This document shows positions 10,574 through 35,899 of a DNA stretch of 64,000 nucleotides, piece by piece. The stretch is taken from IMG/VR virus record IMGVR_UViG_3300035698_018317, positions 161,285-225,284 of that record. The stretch is one strand, 5' to 3'. Position 1 is the stretch's first letter. Each line of letters starts with the position of its first letter. The translations under genes were made by a program, and so were the position numbers. Below the pieces are notes generated by a model that ran no database searches, was not told the DNA's origin, and saw nothing but the letters and a program-made list of their open reading frames with translations.

Positions 10574-10584
10574 GTTGTATTTTT

Positions 10585-10673
10585 GGAAAATAGGCAGATA
10601 TTGGCTTGCTGCGCTGGTTTGCTAAACCAGTTGGCCTGAAAGGGTCATGAGGGTTCGAATCCCTTGTTTTCCG
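10585..10673 (+). tRNA. trnS: tRNA-Ser(GCT)
   Basis: Acceptor GGAAAAT/GTTTTCC, anticodon arm CTGGT-TTGCTAA-ACCAG, long variable arm, TTCGAAT T-loop; CCA not encoded. Confidence 0.92.
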
Positions 10674-10676
10674 TTT

Positions 10677-10764
10677 GGAAAGTAGCCGAATATTGGTTTG
10701 TCGGGCTAGTTTCGAAAACTAGTTGGCCTTCGGGTCATAAGGGTTCGATTCCTCTTACTTTCCG
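10677..10764 (+). tRNA. trnS: tRNA-Ser(CGA)
   Basis: GGAAAGT/ACTTTCC, CTAGT-TTCGAAA-ACTAG, long variable arm. Confidence 0.92.
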
Positions 10765-10833
10765 TGGTGACGATTGCCAATGCAACGCTAGGTTGCATTA
10801 GTTTAAATAAATTTAAAAGTGAATATTGCCATC

Positions 10834-10905
10834 GGGCGGTTAACACTGTGGTCAGTGTGCTGGATTGAAGTCCCAGAAAAGTTGGTTCGATACCATCACC
10901 GCCCA
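10834..10905 (+). tRNA. atypical tRNA-Phe(GAA)-like
   Basis: GGGCGGT/ACCGCCC acceptor, D stem ACAC/GTGT, loop TTGAAGT with A31-C39 mismatch and a T-stem mismatch. Confidence 0.65.
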
Positions 10906-10923
10906 TTTTATGTACACTCCAAC

Positions 10924-10997
10924 GGTGGTTAGAGTGTGACGGTAGCACGGGTGAGCCTGAAACTCATCAAGAATGGGTTCGATTCCCATAACCACCA
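10924..10997 (+). tRNA. atypical tRNA, anticodon loop CCTGAAA (TGA in register; possibly Phe-derived)
   Basis: GGTGGTT/AACCACC, GTGAG/CTCAT anticodon stem, ATGGG-TTCGATT-CCCAT; C33 instead of U33; short variable loop, unlike Ser tRNAs. Confidence 0.6.
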
Positions 10998-11003
10998 TTA
11001 GTC

Positions 11004-11078
11004 GGAGCTTTGGTACTGGTCTGGTGACAGTGTGCGCCTGAAGAGCGTAAAAGTTCGGTTCGATTCCGAAAGGCTCCA
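11004..11078 (+). tRNA. trnF: tRNA-Phe(GAA) variant with G37
   Basis: GGAGCTT/AGGCTCC, TGCGC-CTGAAGA-GCGTA, TTCGG-TTCGATT-CCGAA. Confidence 0.75.
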
Positions 11079-11093
11079 TTTAGTTGTAAAAAC

Positions 11094-11166
11094 GCTGCGG
11101 TAGCTCAGTTGGTAGAGCACTAGACTGAAAATCTAGGTGTCGCTGGTTCGATTCCAGTCCGTAGCA
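11094..11166 (+). tRNA. trnF: tRNA-Phe(GAA), canonical
   Basis: GCTGCGG/CCGTAGC, GCTCAGTTGGTAGAGC D arm, CTAGA-CTGAAAA-TCTAG. Confidence 0.95.
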
Positions 11167-11168
11167 TT

Positions 11169-11316
11169 GGATATTCACATGGCGGAATATATTGTTTCAT
11201 TGACCCTTGTTCTTTATAGAAATGCAAATGGAACTACAAGGCACACGCAGCTTTCTTCGGGAAGTGTGACCTCCCAGCCGAGGTCTTGTCCGTTCAATTC
11301 GGACTGTGAATATCCT
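11169..11316 (+). ncRNA. 148-nt tRNA-like structured RNA
   Basis: 11-bp terminal stem GGATATTCACA/TGTGAATATCC stacked on T arm GTCCG-TTCAATT-CGGAC; internal helices CCTTGT/ACAAGG, CACAC/GTGTG with UUCG hairpin, ACCTC/GAGGT. Confidence 0.65.
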
Positions 11317-11320
11317 AAAC

Positions 11321-11402
11321 GGCAGTATTGAGCAATTGGCTGCTCCCCAGATTGTAAATCTGGCGTCGAAAGGCATTGAAGGTTCGAGTCCTTCTGCTGC
11401 CA
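11321..11402 (+). tRNA. trnY: tRNA-Tyr(GTA) copy 1
   Basis: GGCAGTA/TGCTGCC, CCAGA-TTGTAAA-TCTGG, long variable arm. Confidence 0.92.
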
Positions 11403-11405
11403 GTT

Positions 11406-11636
11406 ATGAGTAAGAAAGATGAAAATAAGCGTAGAGAATACCAAATGCAGAATTATTCCGTGTATTATTTTCCTATAACAGGAGAAGTAATGTGTTGCCC
11501 AAAAAAAAGAAGTGTATTTGGCGAGTTGCACGACCACCACTATTACATAAATTATTGTACTGATTGTGGGCAGCGAGTAAAACTTTTTGTTGCTAAAAGA
11601 AAACGTGTAGTTTGTGAACGTTGTAAAAAAGATTAG
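11406..11636 (+). CDS. small Zn-finger-like hypothetical protein within tRNA array
   Basis: ATG right after tRNA-Tyr; CTDC...CERC. Confidence 0.6.
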   Translation: MSKKDENKRREYQMQNYSVYYFPITGEVMCCPKKRSVFGELHDHHYYINYCTDCGQRVKLFVAKRKRVVCERCKKD

Positions 11637-11644
11637 TCTATTTC

Positions 11645-11726
11645 GGCAGTATTGAGCAATTGGCCGCTCAGCGGACTGTAAATCCGCCGCCTTCGGGCAT
11701 TGAAGGTTCGAGTCCTTCTGCTGCCA
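11645..11726 (+). tRNA. trnY: tRNA-Tyr(GTA) copy 2
   Basis: Same acceptor and T arms as copy 1, with GCGGA-CTGTAAA-TCCGC anticodon arm. Confidence 0.93.
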
Positions 11727-11732
11727 TTATTA

Positions 11733-11838
11733 GCCCCCGTGACGGAATTGGCAGACGTGCGAGTTTTAAGGGTTTAAGAACCCACTAAAAGAAACTCGTG
11801 TCCATACGGGCGTACAGGTTCGAGTCCTGTCGGGGGCA
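11733..11838 (+). tRNA. Leu-body tRNA with 22-nt insertion in anticodon arm (TAA if insertion is at 37/38)
   Basis: GCCCCCG/CGGGGGC, Leu-type D arm TGACGGAATTGGCAGACG, stem CGAGT/ACTCG enclosing 29 nt with an inner GGGTT/AACCC hairpin. Confidence 0.75.
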
Positions 11839-12060
11839 TTAAGATTCAAATTCTTTTTGAATCATCTCCATTACTTTGTTAAAATCTTTTTCACTAGTTG
11901 TTTTGGTTTGAACGTATTCGGCAGCTTTATCTATAGTGAGACCGCCTGTGCGAATGCTATTTACCATCTTACTAGCTAATTTATTTAAATTTAATTCACC
12001 ATAACCCCCAACAAGTGGTGGCATTAATCTTGATTCTAACCATGTGTTAAAAGTTTTCAT
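11839..12060 (-). CDS. small protein with CTS-like N-terminus (MKTFNTWLES), antisense within tRNA array
   Basis: Fills the gap between two tRNA genes exactly; shared N-terminal motif; ATAGATA upstream. Confidence 0.65.
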   Translation of the reverse strand: MKTFNTWLESRLMPPLVGGYGELNLNKLASKMVNSIRTGGLTIDKAAEYVQTKTTSEKDFNKVMEMIQKEFES

Positions 12061-12073
12061 AATGTATCTATTC

Positions 12074-12158
12074 GCCCTAGTGACGGAATTGGCAGACGTG
12101 CTGGCCTTAAAAGCCGGTGTCAATATATGGCGTGCAGGTTCGAGTCCTGTCTAGGGTA
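12074..12158 (+). tRNA. trnL: tRNA-Leu(TAA)
   Basis: GCCCTAG/CTAGGGT, CTGGC-CTTAAAA-GCCGG, long variable arm. Confidence 0.92.
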
Positions 12159-12160
12159 TT

Positions 12161-12233
12161 TTCTGGGGACGTGGTGTGCAGAATGAAGTTAGGACTACAC
12201 AAGGCTTATAGGTTCGAGTCCTATCACGGAACA
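12161..12233 (+). pseudogene. degenerate tRNA-like element
   Basis: Intact T arm ATAGG-TTCGAGT-CCTAT and imperfect acceptor TTCTGGG/CACGGAA; no recognisable D or anticodon arm. Confidence 0.45.
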
Positions 12234-12238
12234 TCTCT

Positions 12239-12326
12239 GGAAAGCAGCCGAATATTGGTTTGTCGGGCTAGTTTTGAAAACTAGTTGGCCTCCGGGTCAT
12301 AAGGGTTCGATTCCTCTTGCTTTCCT
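12239..12326 (+). tRNA. trnS: tRNA-Ser(TGA)
   Basis: GGAAAGC/GCTTTCC, CTAGT-TTTGAAA-ACTAG. Confidence 0.9.
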
Positions 12327-12329
12327 TTT

Positions 12330-12418
12330 GGATGGGAGCCGAATATTGGTTTGTCGGGCTAGTTTGGAAAACTAGTTGGCCTGAAAGGGTCATTAGGGTC
12401 CAATTCCCTACTCATCCG
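12330..12418 (+). tRNA. trnS: tRNA-Ser(GGA)
   Basis: GGATGGG/CTCATCC, CTAGT-TTGGAAA-ACTAG; T-loop variant TCCAATT. Confidence 0.85.
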
Positions 12419-12476
12419 TTCGAATAAAAATATAAAAATTATTCGAACCTTTACTATTATATAGTGGAGGTAAAAA

Positions 12477-13037
12477 ATGAAAGAAAATATTCTTAGATTA
12501 AGAAAAGAAGGAAAATCATATGGAGAAATACAAAAAGAGCTAGGTTGTTCTAAAAGCACAATCTCATATCACTGTGGAGAAGGGCAGAGGGAAAAACAGG
12601 TTGAGAGGCAAAGGCAATTCAGAAAAAACAATGTAATTACTAGAAGAATTGGTTCGTTTACACAAAACAGACCTAAAAAAAAGAACAAACAACCTAAATT
12701 TGAAAGAAGCGTAACTCAAAAAACACAAGAAAAAAGTTATGATTTCCAACGCAAACAAAAATGTTCTAAATTTAATTTCAAAGATGTATTAGAGCATTAT
12801 GGAGAACAAACAACATGTTACTTATCTGGAAGACTTATTGATTTATCAGAACCTAGAACTTATCATTTTGACCATATAATTCCGGTTTCAAAAGGAGGAG
12901 ATTGTAGTTTTGAAAACTTAGGAATTGTTCGTAAAGAAGCAAATAGGGCTAAAAGTGACCTATTAGTAGAAGAATTTATTGAGCTTTGTAAAGACATTCT
13001 CGAATACAATGGTTATACAGTAATTAAAAACGATTAA
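12477..13037 (+). CDS. HNH homing endonuclease with N-terminal HTH
   Basis: LRKEGKSYGEIQKELGCSKSTISYH HTH; CYLSG...HFDHIIPVSKGG...ENLG...N..K. Confidence 0.85.
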   Translation: MKENILRLRKEGKSYGEIQKELGCSKSTISYHCGEGQREKQVERQRQFRKNNVITRRIGSFTQNRPKKKNKQPKFERSVTQKTQEKSYDFQRKQKCSKFNFKDVLEHYGEQTTCYLSGRLIDLSEPRTYHFDHIIPVSKGGDCSFENLGIVRKEANRAKSDLLVEEFIELCKDILEYNGYTVIKND

Positions 13038-17657: not shown

Positions 17658-17681
17658 GCGAGAGTGGTGGAATTGGCAGAC
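17658..17681 (+). pseudogene. 5' fragment of a tRNA-Leu gene
   Basis: GCGAGAGTGGTGGAATTGGCAGAC (acceptor 5' strand plus D arm) ends abruptly before the HNH gene; no 3' half found. Confidence 0.55.
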
Positions 17682-17725
17682 AATATTTTATAAAAAAAAT
17701 TACACCACGCTAACTATTATATTAT

Positions 17726-18235
17726 ATGCCAATATGTAAAAAATGTAATAAAGAATTTCCAAGTAGGATAGGTAATAAAACTTATCATAAAAGAAGTTAT
17801 TGTTTAAAATGTTCTCCTCCGGGTTCCGGTATGGGGTATGAAATAAGAAAGGCCACTAGAAAAAAAGAAAAAGTAAAAGGAAAAAAAGAATGCCCTATTT
17901 GCGGGAAATTTTCGACTTGGACTAAAAATAATGTTTGTTCAACATGTCGGATGATGTGGCAGAGATGGAAAACAAAAAAAAGAGCGGTAGATATGAAAGG
18001 CGGCAAATGCTGCAAGTGTGGAGAAACAGATATGCGGGTTTTAACCTTCCACCATCTTAATGTGGAGGACAAAGAATATAATATTTCCAATTTCTACTCA
18101 AGAATTTGTTGGGAGAAAATAGTTTTAGAAATAGAAAAATGTGATTTAATGTGTTTTAATTGTCATGTGAGATTACATTCCGAAATCAATAGAGCCAAGT
18201 ATTCTTGCATAGAACAATACTATGCTATGACCTAA
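17726..18235 (+). CDS. HNH homing endonuclease with Zn-finger domains
   Basis: CKKC, CLKC, CPIC, GGKCCKCG...TFHH...KCDLMCFNCHVRLH. Confidence 0.82.
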   Translation: MPICKKCNKEFPSRIGNKTYHKRSYCLKCSPPGSGMGYEIRKATRKKEKVKGKKECPICGKFSTWTKNNVCSTCRMMWQRWKTKKRAVDMKGGKCCKCGETDMRVLTFHHLNVEDKEYNISNFYSRICWEKIVLEIEKCDLMCFNCHVRLHSEINRAKYSCIEQYYAMT

Positions 18236-18301: not shown

Positions 18302-18407
18302 GGCTGAATGACGGAATTGGCAGACGTGCGAGCTTTTAGGGTTTGAAAACCCATTAAAAGGTGCTCGTGTCCTTCGGGGCGTGTGGGTTCGAATCCCTCT
18401 TTGGCCA
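18302..18407 (+). tRNA. second Leu-body tRNA with 22-nt anticodon-arm insertion (TTA if insertion is at 37/38)
   Basis: GGCTGAA/TTTGGCC, same D arm, stem CGAGC/GCTCG enclosing 29 nt with an inner GGGTT/AACCC hairpin; 106 nt like the first copy. Confidence 0.72.
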
Positions 18408-18421
18408 GTAAGGAAATTGTT

Positions 18422-18880
18422 ATGTGGCGTGAAGAATACGACGAATACGATGATGATGGCTATCCTTATTATTATCATGATGGCCTTGGTTGTCGTTGTT
18501 ATAAATATGACAGACCTCCTTATAATAAAAATTATAACGTGCCGTCTCATATTCATATAATGAACAAGAATGAGGCGAAAGTAATGCGTCGTCTCAAAAA
18601 TGAAACTGGTTTATCTGAAGAGGGTATTCGAAAGATTAAGAAATATCGAATTATGCTTTCTGAAGCTCAAAAAGAAGGGCAAAAAGCCAAACGGACAAGG
18701 GTGCAAAAAGCTAGAGATGAAGTAATGAAATGCGTTTGTCGTAAGCTTAAATTAGCCAAAGAACATCCTGTTACACAGAAAGCATATCGTGAAGAATGGG
18801 AACGGCGGCGAAAGGAATATGATAATCGTCCTTGTTGTAATAGTAGTATTTATCTAGAATCACCAAAGGATGATAGATAA
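18422..18880 (+). CDS. hypothetical protein
   Basis: ATG after a GTAAGGA SD, between tRNA genes. Confidence 0.65.
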   Translation: MWREEYDEYDDDGYPYYYHDGLGCRCYKYDRPPYNKNYNVPSHIHIMNKNEAKVMRRLKNETGLSEEGIRKIKKYRIMLSEAQKEGQKAKRTRVQKARDEVMKCVCRKLKLAKEHPVTQKAYREEWERRRKEYDNRPCCNSSIYLESPKDDR

Positions 18881-18885
18881 AATCC

Positions 18886-18969
18886 AGCCTCGTGACGGAA
18901 TTGGCAGACGTTCGGGACTTAAAATCCCGTGCCCTTCGGGGCGTGTGGGTTCGAGTCCCACCGAGGCTA
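18886..18969 (+). tRNA. trnL: tRNA-Leu(TAA)
   Basis: AGCCTCG/CGAGGCT, CGGGA-CTTAAAA-TCCCG. Confidence 0.93.
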
Positions 18970-18983
18970 TTTAGAAATAATCA

Positions 18984-19067
18984 GGCCGAGTGACGGAACT
19001 GGCAGACGTGCGGGGTTCAAATTCCCGTGTCCGAAAGGGCGTGTGGGTTCGAGTCCCACCTCGGCCA
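18984..19067 (+). tRNA. trnL: tRNA-Leu(CAA)
   Basis: GGCCGAG/CTCGGCC, CGGGG-TTCAAAT-TCCCG. Confidence 0.92.
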
Positions 19068-19084: not shown

Positions 19085-19363
19085 ATGACCTTACGAAGTG
19101 GAATAAAAATTATACATCCTTCTATAAACGCTCCTGAGTTAGAAGAGACAACTTGTATCAAGTGTGGGGAAAATTTTCTTTCAGAAGACCGACGAAGAAT
19201 TAGATATTGTTCAAAATGCAGAAAGATTGTTAATTCTCCGTCACACAAATTAGGTATAGCATCAGAACATATAGATTATCGTAAAATTTTTAACCATCTG
19301 GAACCTCGCCAGATACGACAAATGAAAATAAAAAGTCGTACAATTAGGCAATATCACTCATAG
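19085..19363 (+). CDS. small Zn-ribbon hypothetical protein
   Basis: CIKC...CSKC; SD AAAGGTGA upstream. Confidence 0.6.
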   Translation: MTLRSGIKIIHPSINAPELEETTCIKCGENFLSEDRRRIRYCSKCRKIVNSPSHKLGIASEHIDYRKIFNHLEPRQIRQMKIKSRTIRQYHS

Positions 19364-34538: not shown

Positions 34539-34552
34539 ACCCGCTCATTTTT
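34517..34552. terminator. bidirectional terminator between convergent genes
   Basis: AAAAATGAGCGGGTT-GATTT-AAACCCGCTCATTTTT. Confidence 0.85.
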
Positions 34553-35231
34553 ACTTTTTCCTTTCCAAAATCTCTTCTGGAGTAAGATTAGGTTGCCATT
34601 GTCTGATTTTTTTTCTGAGAACTGACAGAGGGACACCATGTTCGTTGCCACTAACTCCATACTTATCAGCCATACCTTGATGATGCCCAGCTAAGAACCT
34701 TGCAAAATCTTCTAATTGTGTTCCATATTGTCCTTTATCAGACAACATATGAGCATGGTCTTGCCACCAAGGAGAAGTTGGTTCTTGTATGTAAGTCACA
34801 TATCCAGCTTTTTGAGCAGCAATAACGTAATTTTCCATTTCCCATGCTTGGACATTAGTGTTGTCAATAATGATAGGATGGACATTTTCAGATAGAGCCT
34901 TTTTAAATCTCCTGAAGTTCCAATCATGAGCGGCCCGTAATTTATCTCCACTCCAATTTTCTCTATAAGTTTCTGGCTCTAATTCTGCATAGTATGCTTC
35001 GTCAATTTCTTCACCACGTTCAAGTTTATCTTGTTTTTCTTTGATAATCTCTAATATGAAAAAATCATCCGAGCCAAAGATATGACTTGCAGGGTCTAAA
35101 TTTTCTCCGTATTGTTTTAAAACTTCTTTAGCGGTATAACTTTTACCACTTCCTGAAATACCTCTCATGATAACACAGGTTTTTTGTTCTTTACGGTCTA
35201 CGTAATTTACGAATCTCATTCCATCACTCAT
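34551..35231 (-). CDS. P-loop kinase (AAA_33 / N4BP2-type polynucleotide kinase-like)
   Basis: MRGISGSGKS, IIIDNTN, WE..NY, QEP..PW. Confidence 0.78.
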   Translation of the reverse strand: MSDGMRFVNYVDRKEQKTCVIMRGISGSGKSYTAKEVLKQYGENLDPASHIFGSDDFFILEIIKEKQDKLERGEEIDEAYYAELEPETYRENWSGDKLRAAHDWNFRRFKKALSENVHPIIIDNTNVQAWEMENYVIAAQKAGYVTYIQEPTSPWWQDHAHMLSDKGQYGTQLEDFARFLAGHHQGMADKYGVSGNEHGVPLSVLRKKIRQWQPNLTPEEILERKK

Positions 35232-35899
35232 TTGTATACCACCTTTGAAAACCATATAGGTTCTTCATCCACAATCCAAGTCATTCCGCAATTTTTCATG
35301 CCGCTAATGAATGCACTGCTATGTTTTGCTACTTCTTCTGAAAAATCTTCATTGTTAGATTCTAATATTTTACTAGCTTTTTCACATTCTTTCTTTATTT
35401 CCTCACGGGTATTTCCGATTGCAAGTTTAGAAAACATTACAGACGGAGCACCGTGTGTGACTAATACGTATTTATCATGTCCAGATTTTTTTAGGTCCAG
35501 AAGTAGTTCAAGAGAACGGTCTATCCAAACATCAATAGACTCTGGATTAAATTTTCTACTGTCATCGTCTAACCAATCATTAGGCCAACCAATATTCTGA
35601 AAAAGTAAAGACCTATTTGGAATATCAATTATTTCAGGGTTATGAAATCTATACTCACCCAATCTGTCATCTACATGAAATTCAGTCTCCAATATTTCAG
35701 ACAAAACAGATGCGGTCTGTAGAGTTCTATTATAGGGGCTAACAAGCCCTTTGTAATCCTCAAATTTAAAATTTTCGTACAACCAAGTAGCTGTTCTACA
35801 AACTTGAGTCATCCCTGCATCTGTCAAGGTGCTATCTAAGTTATAAGTAACCCCCATATTACGACGACTTTCTGCATGTCTAATTATCAATAATTCCAT
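35228..35899 (-). CDS. histidine phosphatase family protein
   Basis: IIRHAES, SPYNRTLQTA, LGE, LVTHG. Confidence 0.88.
   Translation of the reverse strand: MELLIIRHAESRRNMGVTYNLDSTLTDAGMTQVCRTATWLYENFKFEDYKGLVSPYNRTLQTASVLSEILETEFHVDDRLGEYRFHNPEIIDIPNRSLLFQNIGWPNDWLDDDSRKFNPESIDVWIDRSLELLLDLKKSGHDKYVLVTHGAPSVMFSKLAIGNTREEIKKECEKASKILESNNEDFSEEVAKHSSAFISGMKNCGMTWIVDEEPIWFSKVVYK

What the first reader, a model, noticed from the sequence alone, without database searches (positions are those of the whole stretch)
18302..18407. Second extended-arm tRNA with identical insertion architecture; possible ochre (UUA) anticodon after splicing
Seen: same 106-nt length and same 29-nt inner architecture as copy A (TTTTA-GGGTT-TGAA-AACCC-AT-TAAAA-GGT), but different acceptor stem and compensatory change T-A to C-G at 31-39. 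This points to selection on structure rather than decay. Here 32-35 (TTTT) pair with AAAA next to a 3-nt bulge (GGT), a bulge-helix-loop-like junction. Excision at 37/38 would give loop TT-TTA-GT, an anticodon reading the UAA stop. Other registers would give TAG (Leu), or TGA from the apical loop. Many genes in the window end in TAA, so constitutive suppression seems unlikely. Conditional read-through or a non-decoding role is inference.
Basis: partly seen in the sequence, partly recalled or inferred. Interest (0 to 1): 0.78.

Follow-up and report, generated by a model that had tools for sequence, protein, structure and literature searches.

The report
Phage leucine tRNA with 22-base insert
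A giant-phage gene for an ordinary leucine tRNA (anticodon UAG, not a stop-codon reader) is interrupted inside its anticodon by a 22-base hairpin, one of a recurring family of such inserts, which hints at an undescribed way of cutting and rejoining tRNAs in phage-infected bacteria.

Summary
Window 18302-18407 is a 106-nt class-II tRNA-Leu-like gene (Rfam tRNA, 37.2 bits) with a 29-nt "anticodon loop", and 11733-11838 is a sister copy.

The ochre reading is wrong. Orthologous insert-less alleles in related phages (TARA contig L241:563-645, and a salt-lake contig) have the same promoter, acceptor stem and downstream gene, and the loop UUUAGGA or UUUAGAA. This fixes the insert to 18337-18358, between U34 and A35 of tRNA-Leu(UAG).

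The same architecture recurs with unrelated sequences: 2 nt, a 5-bp/4-nt-loop hairpin, a 6-nt A-rich tail, 22 nt in all. It occurs in Leu(UAA), Leu(CAA), Leu(GAG) and Phe(GAA) genes of relatives, at 32/33, 34/35 or 35/36. It is present or absent at orthologous loci. The helix shows full pairing and compensatory changes. Deleting the 22 nt in silico restores canonical tRNAs in 9 of 9 cases.

There is no bulge-helix-bulge (BHB) motif, no group I core, and no EndA or RtcB gene. The lineage does encode Rnl2/Rnl5-type RNA ligases. Homing-endonuclease genes sit next to most insert-bearing alleles.

Best reading: a protein-spliced mini-intron that travels with homing endonucleases. Splicing itself is inferred, not shown.

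The parts
18302..18407 (+). tRNA-Leu(UAG) gene interrupted by a 22-nt insert (copy B)
   Evidence: Rfam tRNA 37.2 bits. With 18337-18358 removed, ARAGORN calls an 84-nt tRNA-Leu(tag). Insert-less ortholog is L241:563-645.
18329..18333 (+). anticodon stem, 5' strand (CGAGC)
   Evidence: Pairs with 18363-18367 in the predicted fold. The C-G at 31-39 replaces the U-A of copy A.
18334..18336 (+). loop nucleotides U32 U33 U34 (5' exon end; U34 is the first anticodon base)
   Evidence: The last base shared with the insert-less salt-lake allele is 18336. MAFFT opens the gap after GCTTT.
18337..18358 (+). 22-nt insert or mini-intron: 2 nt, then hairpin 18339-18343 / 18348-18352 with loop 18344-18347, then 6-nt tail 18353-18358
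   Evidence: Boundaries are unique from the orthologs. Hairpin. Helix covariation.
18359..18362 (+). A35 G36 G37 U38 (3' exon start; the rest of the anticodon)
   Evidence: Aligns with the AGGA of the insert-less ortholog.
18363..18367 (+). anticodon stem, 3' strand (GCUCG)
11733..11838 (+). sister copy A: tRNA-Leu with a homologous 22-nt insert at 11768-11789 (or one base to the right); restored loop UUUAGAA, so also Leu(UAG)
17726..18235 (+). free-standing HNH homing-endonuclease gene, 66 nt upstream of copy B
   Evidence: phrog_2255, E = 1e-24. Homologs lie next to insert-bearing tRNAs in L241 and L247.
17658..17685 (+). orphan 5' part of a tRNA-Leu gene (acceptor strand and D arm), broken just before the anticodon stem
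   Evidence: Read directly. A relative in run X3 carries a complete tRNA-Leu(UAA) at this place.
18422..18880 (+). conserved ORF of unknown function used as the synteny anchor
   Evidence: Homologs P0001-P0020 and their contigs.
18886..18969 (+). insert-less tRNA-Leu(UAA); its ortholog in L127 carries a different 22-nt insert between A35 and A36
18984..19067 (+). insert-less tRNA-Leu(CAA); its orthologs in L127, L242 and L241 carry a third 22-nt insert
34551..35899 (-). P-loop kinase (AAA_33) and adjacent histidine phosphatase genes: possible RNA end-healing pair (weak link)

Best explanation
Window 18302-18407 is a huge-phage tRNA-Leu gene whose anticodon is UAG (it reads CUN leucine codons). 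A 22-bp unit at 18337-18358 splits the anticodon between U34 and A35. The unit has its own fixed architecture: 2 nt, a 5-bp hairpin with a 4-nt loop, and a 6-nt A-rich tail. It belongs to a family of equally long but otherwise unrelated inserts found at different anticodon-loop positions of Leu and Phe tRNA genes in related marine and salt-lake phages.

Shown here: the gene's identity, the insert boundaries, the family, its presence/absence polymorphism, and selection on the hairpin.

Inferred: the transcript cannot decode until the unit is removed. A protein endonuclease that recognises the hairpin unit, rather than a fixed tRNA position, would cut on both sides. The two halves, held together by the cloverleaf, would then be sealed by a phage ATP-dependent RNA ligase of the Rnl2/Rnl5 type, possibly after end healing by the phage kinase and phosphatase.

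Also inferred: at the DNA level the insert persists and spreads together with neighbouring free-standing homing-endonuclease genes. It would do so by gene conversion, and perhaps by destroying their target site. This would explain the block-wise differences between insert-bearing and insert-less alleles.
For: Identity and boundaries:
- The ortholog L241:563-645 has the same promoter-like TTGACG-17-TATAAT, the same acceptor stem as the L127 allele, and the same downstream gene (89% identical). It lacks the 22 nt and has the loop UUUAGGA.
- A second insert-less allele, in salt-lake run X3, joins 18336 directly to AGAA.
- The register table gives a unique best fit at 34/35.

Family:
- Five unrelated 22-nt inserts occur in Leu-UAG, -UAA, -CAA, -GAG and Phe-GAA genes, each with an insert-less counterpart.
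- In every one a hairpin of at least 5 bp starts at insert nt 3 (nt 2 in one). Random 22-mers show such a stem in 7% of cases.
- In the boundary-anchored alignment, 35 of 35 helix cells pair and 4 of 5 pairs change on both sides. None of 500 shuffles reach this, and slid controls pair in 37-60% of cells.
- A 595-kb relative has a 21-nt insert with the same GGGUU/AACCC stem in a tRNA-Met gene.

Function retained:
- Deleting the insert restores canonical tRNAs in 9 of 9 cases.
- Residual loops keep U33 and a purine at 37.
- The phage otherwise lacks a CUN reader, although CUN codons are 43% of its Leu codons.

Enzymes and context:
- An Rnl5-like ligase is encoded in the genome, and 2-4 such ligases in the complete relative. 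Kinase and phosphatase genes are present.
- HNH or LAGLIDADG-type endonuclease genes lie next to 6 of 8 insert-bearing alleles and 0 of 5 insert-less ones.
Against: - No RNA data: no RNA run was listed, so neither cutting nor joining is shown.
- No candidate endonuclease. EndA, RtcB, RNase III and Rnl1 families are absent from the 225-kb fragment. EndA and RtcB are also absent from the complete 595-kb relative.
- RNA ligases and kinases are common in large phages as tRNA-repair tools, so they do not point to splicing in particular.
- Protein-spliced tRNA introns are not known in bacteria.
- The window's copy B has a U50-U64 mismatch in the T stem and two G-U pairs in the acceptor stem, which the L127 ortholog lacks. 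This could be early decay.
- Relatives also carry a 12-nt hairpin-less insert, which a hairpin-specific enzyme would not explain.
- The endonuclease association rests on few, non-independent alleles.
Confidence: 0.55

Rival explanations
1. The insert is never removed. The 106-nt RNA is a non-decoding tRNA-like molecule. LeuRS would still charge it, because bacterial LeuRS does not read the anticodon (established knowledge). It would then serve as a decoy, a regulator, or an amino-acid donor outside translation.
For: No splicing enzyme was found. Most inserts sit in tRNA-Leu genes. The hairpin is conserved as if it were a functional part.
Against: Insert-less orthologs at the same loci are ordinary decoding tRNAs. 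The residual loop nucleotides stay canonical, and anticodons of four different Leu isoacceptors and Phe are preserved exactly around the inserts. That preservation would serve no purpose in a non-decoding RNA. PheRS does read the anticodon (established knowledge), yet a Phe gene carries the insert.
Confidence: 0.2
2. The insert is a DNA-level event only: a selfish palindromic insertion, or a scar that makes the gene immune to the neighbouring homing endonuclease. It has inactivated the tRNA, so copies A and B are young pseudogenes.
For: Homing-endonuclease genes lie next to insert-bearing alleles. An orphan tRNA-Leu 5' fragment at 17658-17685 shows that this region is being rearranged. There is a T-stem mismatch in the window's copy B.
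Against: The same insert is kept unchanged in phages from a salt lake, the open ocean and other sites, while the acceptor and T stems change in compensatory ways. Five unrelated inserts share one length and one architecture. In relative L127 all three Leu genes in the fetched 13-kb stretch carry inserts. The hairpin is not a dispersed repeat in the genome.
Confidence: 0.17
3. One reading: a BHB-like intron excised at 37/38 gives a tRNA-Leu body with a UUA anticodon, that is, an ochre suppressor.
For: Removing 22 nt after loop nt 5 or 6 does give UUUUAGU. A 4-bp helix next to a 3-nt bulge is in the predicted fold. Suppressor tRNAs occur in some recoded phages (PMC10879173 abstract).
Against: Orthologs fix the insert at 34/35. 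The 37/38 register gives UAU, CAC and GAA anticodons for the sister inserts. There is only one bulge. No EndA gene was found. TAA is the stop of 128 of 183 long ORFs, and code 11 already gives 86% coding coverage.
Confidence: 0.03
4. The insert is a self-splicing or self-cleaving RNA, either a degenerate group I intron or a small ribozyme.
For: Group I introns sit between U34 and A35 of bacterial tRNA-Leu(UAA) genes (established knowledge), the same position as here.
Against: At 22 nt it is far below any known ribozyme core. Rfam finds nothing but tRNA, even at E = 1. The last insert base is A, not the G that ends group I introns. The position varies between 32/33 and 35/36.
Confidence: 0.03

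Closest known systems
'Enigmatic' tRNA introns of Lak megaphages (Devoto et al. 2019, PMC6784885)
   Same: Both are huge phages of bacteria. Both have tRNA genes with non-group-I inserts in the anticodon region. The inserts are identical across cohorts and present or absent between related genomes. The excision point was re-set by comparing alleles with and without the insert. The mechanism is unknown.
   Different: The one Lak intron sequence seen here is much longer (93 nt, in tRNA-Tyr), and one was reported to hold a tRNA-like sequence. No fixed length, common hairpin architecture or endonuclease neighbourhood appeared in the passages read. Here the inserts are exactly 22 nt and share one layout.
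Archaeal and eukaryal protein-spliced tRNA introns (bulge-helix-bulge, EndA/Sen endonuclease, RtcB or Trl1 ligase), including non-canonical positions (PMC4090602)
   Same: Short introns in or near the anticodon loop that are recognised by their own structure and removed by proteins. In archaea the position can vary.
   Different: There is no BHB motif. None sits at the canonical 37/38 position. No EndA or RtcB gene was found. The host is bacterial, judged from the class-II tRNA-Tyr with G1-C72, sigma-70-like promoters and a T4-like portal.
Group I introns in bacterial tRNA-Leu(UAA) anticodon loops (established knowledge)
   Same: They interrupt a tRNA-Leu between U34 and A35, are polymorphic among relatives, and are often linked to homing endonucleases.
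   Different: Those introns are over 200 nt and self-splicing. This insert is 22 nt, with no catalytic core and no Rfam match.
Free-standing homing endonucleases: T4 SegB in the tRNA gene cluster, and 'collaborative homing' of an endonuclease-less intron with a neighbouring endonuclease gene in cyanophage psbA (recalled from memory, not checked here)
   Same: Endonuclease genes lie between tRNA genes. The interrupted allele lies beside the endonuclease gene. Neighbouring sequence differs in blocks, like co-conversion tracts.
   Different: Cleavage specificity is untested. The interrupting element is a 22-nt hairpin rather than a ribozyme.
T4 Pnkp/Rnl1 repair of anticodon-loop breaks (established knowledge)
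   Same: A phage ligase seals a break next to the wobble base of a tRNA whose halves stay together. This is the sealing step proposed here.
   Different: That is repair of host-inflicted damage, not removal of an encoded insert. The ligase here is the OB-plus-nucleotidyltransferase type nearest to Naegleria Rnl and T4 Rnl2.

Membership tests
tRNA (Rfam RF00005) | Cloverleaf matching the covariance model above the gathering score | tested here: met
   37.2 bits against 29, all 71 model positions matched. One non-standard T-stem pair.
Bacterial class-II tRNA-Leu | Long variable arm, Leu-type D arm, A73, and a Leu anticodon once the insert is set aside | tested here: met
   Aligns with three ordinary tRNA-Leu genes of the window. 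ARAGORN calls tRNA-Leu(tag) after in-silico removal of 18337-18358. The ortholog has the loop UUUAGGA.
Ochre suppressor tRNA | Anticodon UUA in the mature RNA | tested here: not met
   Ortholog-defined boundaries give UAG. UUA needs a register that fits the orthologs worse (4 of 7 against 6 of 7) and gives mis-sense anticodons in the sister genes.
Ochre suppressor tRNA | Genome tolerant of, or dependent on, UAA read-through (recoding) | tested here: not met
   TAA is 70% of stops. The standard code gives 86% coverage by ORFs of at least 100 aa.
BHB-type (archaeal/eukaryal) tRNA intron | Two 3-nt bulges separated by a 4-bp helix, with the cuts in the bulges | tested here: not met
   Predicted folds show one 3-nt unpaired stretch beside a 4-5-bp helix in copy B. 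The five insert types share no such motif.
BHB-type (archaeal/eukaryal) tRNA intron | EndA/Sen-family endonuclease available | tested here: not met
   PF01974 is absent from the 225-kb fragment and from the complete 595-kb relative. The control search rang in 4 archaea. The host genome is unknown.
Group I intron | Conserved catalytic core (P3-P9), terminal G, size over about 200 nt | tested here: not met
   22 nt, ends in A, and no Rfam family other than tRNA at E up to 1.
Phage tRNA introns of unknown mechanism (Lak type) | Phage tRNA gene with a non-ribozyme insert in the anticodon region, conserved among related phages and missing from some alleles | tested here: met
Phage tRNA introns of unknown mechanism (Lak type) | Removal from the RNA | not testable with these tools
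   No RNA run was listed. The paper passages read for Lak gave no splicing data either.
Homing-endonuclease-associated mobile insert | Endonuclease gene adjacent to the interrupted allele and absent beside the uninterrupted one | tested here: inconclusive
   6 of 8 against 0 of 5 alleles by my count. The alleles are not independent.
Homing-endonuclease-associated mobile insert | Endonuclease cuts the insert-less allele at or near the insertion site | not testable with these tools
   Needs an enzyme assay.

The most novel reading that the evidence does not exclude
A tRNA-splicing pathway in bacterial viruses that has not been described. Autonomous 22-nt hairpin mini-introns may split the anticodon itself. 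An unknown hairpin-measuring endonuclease would excise them, and phage Rnl-family ligases would rejoin the halves. The introns would spread between phage genomes in partnership with free-standing homing endonucleases.
Probability: 0.4. Interest if true: 0.85.

Novelty: new variant of a known kind. Interest (0 to 1): 0.7.

Why it matters
Bacteria and their viruses are thought to have only self-splicing (group I/II) introns in tRNA genes. Protein-dependent tRNA splicing is treated as a hallmark of archaea and eukaryotes.

This is a family of ribozyme-less, strictly 22-nt inserts that split anticodons, are kept under structural selection, and leave perfect tRNAs when removed. Either it reveals a new phage or bacterial cut-and-join activity, or it reveals a new class of deliberately disabled tRNA-like RNAs.

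It also bears on annotation. Default tRNA finders miss these genes, and intron-aware ones place the intron at 37/38 and so report the wrong anticodon (UAA for copy A, or a false "suppressor" for copy B). The case comes with natural controls, namely insert-less orthologs, which makes it directly testable.

Tried and rejected
1. Exact search for the insert in IMG/VR gave only one chance match inside a coding region (L001). The 24-mer spanning the D arm and anticodon stem gave none.
2. A relative search with the 772-aa neighbour protein found nothing.
3. A pattern for Leu-type tRNAs with enlarged loops found many odd phage tRNA-like genes in IMG/VR. A few are clear analogues: L020 (23-nt insert) and L051 (20-nt insert), both in Leu-UAA. 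None is a close relative.
4. The same pattern in cellular genomes was swamped by a Pedobacter tRNA-like gene and by chance juxtapositions.
5. No RNA sequencing run was listed. DNA contigs were laid instead.
6. RNase III-like geometry was considered. The cuts in copy B would leave a 2-nt 3' overhang on one possible helix, but the same logic gives 1 nt for insert b and 3 nt for c and d. No RNase III gene was found either. Dropped as a general rule.
7. A single fixed cut position relative to the tRNA body was considered. Position 34/35 would turn insert b into UUA, 35/36 would turn copy B into UUG, and neither fits the Phe gene. Rejected in favour of recognition of the insert itself.
8. A dispersed REP-like repeat was considered. 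The hairpin occurs only in the two tRNA genes of the genome.
9. The literature searches found only the Lak report.

Full report
CONTEXT. The window is the last 64 kb of a 225-kb IMG/VR virus record (36.8% G+C, CheckV completeness 44%). The record encodes a T4-like portal and a tail sheath. Its nearest public relative is an uncultured 595-kb huge phage, LR756511.1, with 58% portal identity over the full length. Near-identical DNA occurs in salt-lake metagenomes. Relatives occur in TARA ocean and other aquatic assemblies. The host is taken to be bacterial. The tRNA-Tyr genes are class II with G1-C72 (the rule is established knowledge). The relatives' tRNA genes carry TTGACG-17-TATAAT promoters. 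The standard code gives 86% coverage by ORFs of at least 100 aa.

THE OBSERVATION. Window 18302-18407 matches the Rfam tRNA model end to end (37.2 bits). So does copy A at 11733-11838 (41.8 bits). Both align with the window's three ordinary tRNA-Leu genes everywhere except for 22 extra bases inside the anticodon loop. Default ARAGORN misses both genes. With introns allowed, it calls copy A as Leu(taa) with an intron at 37/38 and still misses copy B.

WHERE THE INSERT REALLY SITS. Laying DNA contigs of four salt-lake runs on the region showed a low-depth contig. It follows the upstream spacer and the 5' half of copy B up to 18336, then reads AGAAGCTA and continues as a Leu variable arm. This is an allele without the 22 nt, with the loop UUUAGAA.

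Homologs of the downstream ORF led to syntenic contigs. In L241 (TARA), the gene directly upstream of the 89%-identical ORF is an 83-nt tRNA. It has the same promoter, the acceptor stem of the L127 allele of copy B, and the loop UUUAGGA, that is, Leu(UAG). MAFFT opens one 22-column gap, after GCTTT and before AGG. Of the eight possible registers, only removal after loop nt 3 reproduces the ortholog (6 of 7 positions; the anticodon UAG and U33 are kept). The 37/38 register scores 4 of 7.

So the insert is 18337-18358, between U34 and A35. The restored loop UUUAGGU has the G36-G37 typical of CUN-reading Leu tRNAs (established knowledge on TrmD substrates). The phage fragment has Leu-UAA (two genes) and Leu-CAA but no other CUN reader, and CUN codons make up 43% of its Leu codons. 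TAA ends 128 of 183 long ORFs. The ochre-suppressor reading is therefore rejected.

A FAMILY OF INSERTS. Related contigs show the same phenomenon at other loci.
- The ortholog of the window's insert-less Leu(UAA) gene (18886) carries a different 22-nt insert in L127, placed uniquely between A35 and A36.
- The ortholog of the window's insert-less Leu(CAA) gene (18984) carries a third 22-nt insert in L127, L242 and L241.
- A Leu(GAG) gene is insert-less in L241 and carries a fourth 22-nt insert in L247.
- A class-I tRNA-Phe(GAA) gene in L242 carries a fifth 22-nt insert at 31/32 or 32/33.
- A variant of the copy-B insert sits on a copy-A-like body in L247.

All five are exactly 22 nt. With the boundaries set by the orthologs, all share one layout: 2 nt, a stem of at least 5 bp starting at nt 3 (nt 2 in one case), a 4-nt loop (6 nt in one case), and a 4-6-nt A-rich tail. 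Random 22-mers of the same composition have such a stem anywhere in 7% of cases.

In the ungapped, boundary-anchored alignment of seven inserts from four of the families, the helix pairs in 35 of 35 cells. Four of its five pairs change on both sides. None of 500 shuffles reach this, and slid controls pair in only 37-60% of cells. The four families are not alignable outside the helix, so this is largely structural convergence rather than covariation within one lineage.

Removing the 22 nt in silico makes ARAGORN call all nine genes as canonical tRNAs (Leu-tag, -taa, -caa, -gag; Phe-gaa). None is called with the insert in place. The 595-kb relative has a tRNA-Met(CAU) gene with a 21-nt insert between C32 and U33 that uses the same GGGUU/AACCC stem. 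It also has further enlarged tRNA genes. In the window's own genome the hairpin occurs only in the two tRNA genes.

WHAT IT IS NOT. Rfam finds nothing but tRNA, even at E = 1. There is no BHB motif. The predicted folds keep the anticodon stem and add an inner hairpin, with one unpaired triplet in copy B only. EndA, RtcB, RNase III and Rnl1 families are absent from the 225-kb fragment. EndA and RtcB are also absent from the complete 595-kb relative.

WHAT COULD PROCESS IT. The genome encodes a 447-aa ligase with an OB domain and an RNA-ligase domain. Its nearest solved relatives are the Naegleria Rnl and T4 Rnl2. It also encodes two P-loop kinases, one of them next to a histidine phosphatase. 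The 595-kb relative has two to four such ligases.

These enzymes seal 3'-OH/5'-phosphate breaks (established knowledge). A tRNA whose halves are held by the cloverleaf and broken at the anticodon is the classical substrate of phage RNA repair. The insert's position in the loop varies while its internal layout is constant. The cutting activity, if it exists, must therefore recognise the insert itself. None of this is shown: no RNA run was listed.

DNA-LEVEL CONTEXT. Window 17726-18235, 66 nt upstream of copy B, is an HNH endonuclease gene (phrog_2255, E = 1e-24). Homologs lie directly upstream of the insert-bearing Leu(CAA) gene in L241 and directly downstream of the insert-bearing gene in L247. 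A LAGLIDADG-type endonuclease gene lies between the two insert-bearing genes of L127 and L242. Where the Leu(CAA) gene is insert-less (the window and L247), no gene lies between it and the preceding tRNA. By my count, 6 of 8 insert-bearing alleles and 0 of 5 insert-less alleles have an adjacent endonuclease gene. The one-sided Fisher value is about 0.016, but the alleles are not independent.

Insert-bearing and insert-less orthologs differ as a block across the D arm and anticodon stem, while the acceptor, variable and T arms agree. An orphan 5' part of a tRNA-Leu gene, broken just before the anticodon stem, lies upstream of the HNH gene (17658-17685). This resembles free-standing homing endonucleases with co-conversion, and an insert that protects the resident allele. 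That comparison rests on my memory of T4 SegB and cyanophage psbA.

VERDICT. The identity of the gene (Leu-UAG), the insert boundaries, and the existence of a structurally selected 22-nt family are well supported. That the unit is spliced from the RNA is the most economical reading, at about 0.55. The rivals are a non-decoding tRNA-like RNA (0.2) and a young pseudogene or immunity scar (0.17). The only published parallel found is the "enigmatic" and much longer introns of Lak megaphages.

Noticed in passing
window 17658-17685: Orphan 5' part of a tRNA-Leu gene (acceptor strand plus D arm), ending just before the anticodon stem and followed by A/T-rich DNA and the HNH gene. A relative in run X3 has a complete tRNA-Leu(UAA) at this place.
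   Followed up: partly
window 10584-12419 and 18302-19067: The phage's tRNA set in this fragment is almost entirely class II: five Ser, five Leu (counting copies A and B) and two Tyr. It also has one canonical Phe gene and three divergent Phe(GAA)-like genes (10834-10905, 10925-10996, 11004-11078) that Rfam scores at 32-50 bits. ARAGORN misses two of the three and calls the third tRNA-Ser(tga). The bias might reflect a defence or counter-defence aimed at long-arm tRNAs. Not tested.
   Followed up: no
L241:1119-1213 and L247:1529-1623: tRNA-Leu(UAA) genes with a 12-nt A-rich insert that has no hairpin, placed 5' of an intact CUUAAAA loop. The insert differs at 3 of 12 positions between the two contigs and the tRNA body at 4 of 83. 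This is a second kind of insert.
   Followed up: partly
L255:4031-4195, L255:5575-5669, L258:5245-5343; LR756511.1 (L403-L406): More distant relatives and the 595-kb phage carry tRNA genes of 93-165 nt with inserts of about 21 to 93 nt. L255:5575 also parses with a 29-nt loop, but I could not resolve its anticodon.
   Followed up: partly
L255:126-563, L255:4655-4996, L257:1474-1905: Relatives encode SmpB and a tRNA-binding-domain protein near their tRNA genes, so this phage lineage carries a wider translation toolkit.
   Followed up: no
window 12477-13037; L242:4638-5552: Further free-standing endonuclease genes sit inside the tRNA arrays: an HNH_4 plus HTH protein (phrog_6050) and a LAGLIDADG-type protein (phrog_4645). 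Small zinc-ribbon-like ORFs also lie between tRNA genes (for example 19085-19363).
   Followed up: partly
L276, L280, L282 and about 40 other Pedobacter loci: Pedobacter species share a conserved tRNA-like gene with a Leu-type D arm and a variable arm of about 36 nt. It is unrelated to the finding and turned up in the cellular-genome scan.
   Followed up: no
L020:1922-2001, L051:858-934 (minus strand), L066, L011/L116: Unrelated IMG/VR phages have tRNA-Leu genes with 20-23-nt hairpin inserts at or next to the wobble position (CU|hairpin|UAAAA). Short hairpin inserts in phage tRNA-Leu genes are therefore not confined to this lineage.
   Followed up: partly
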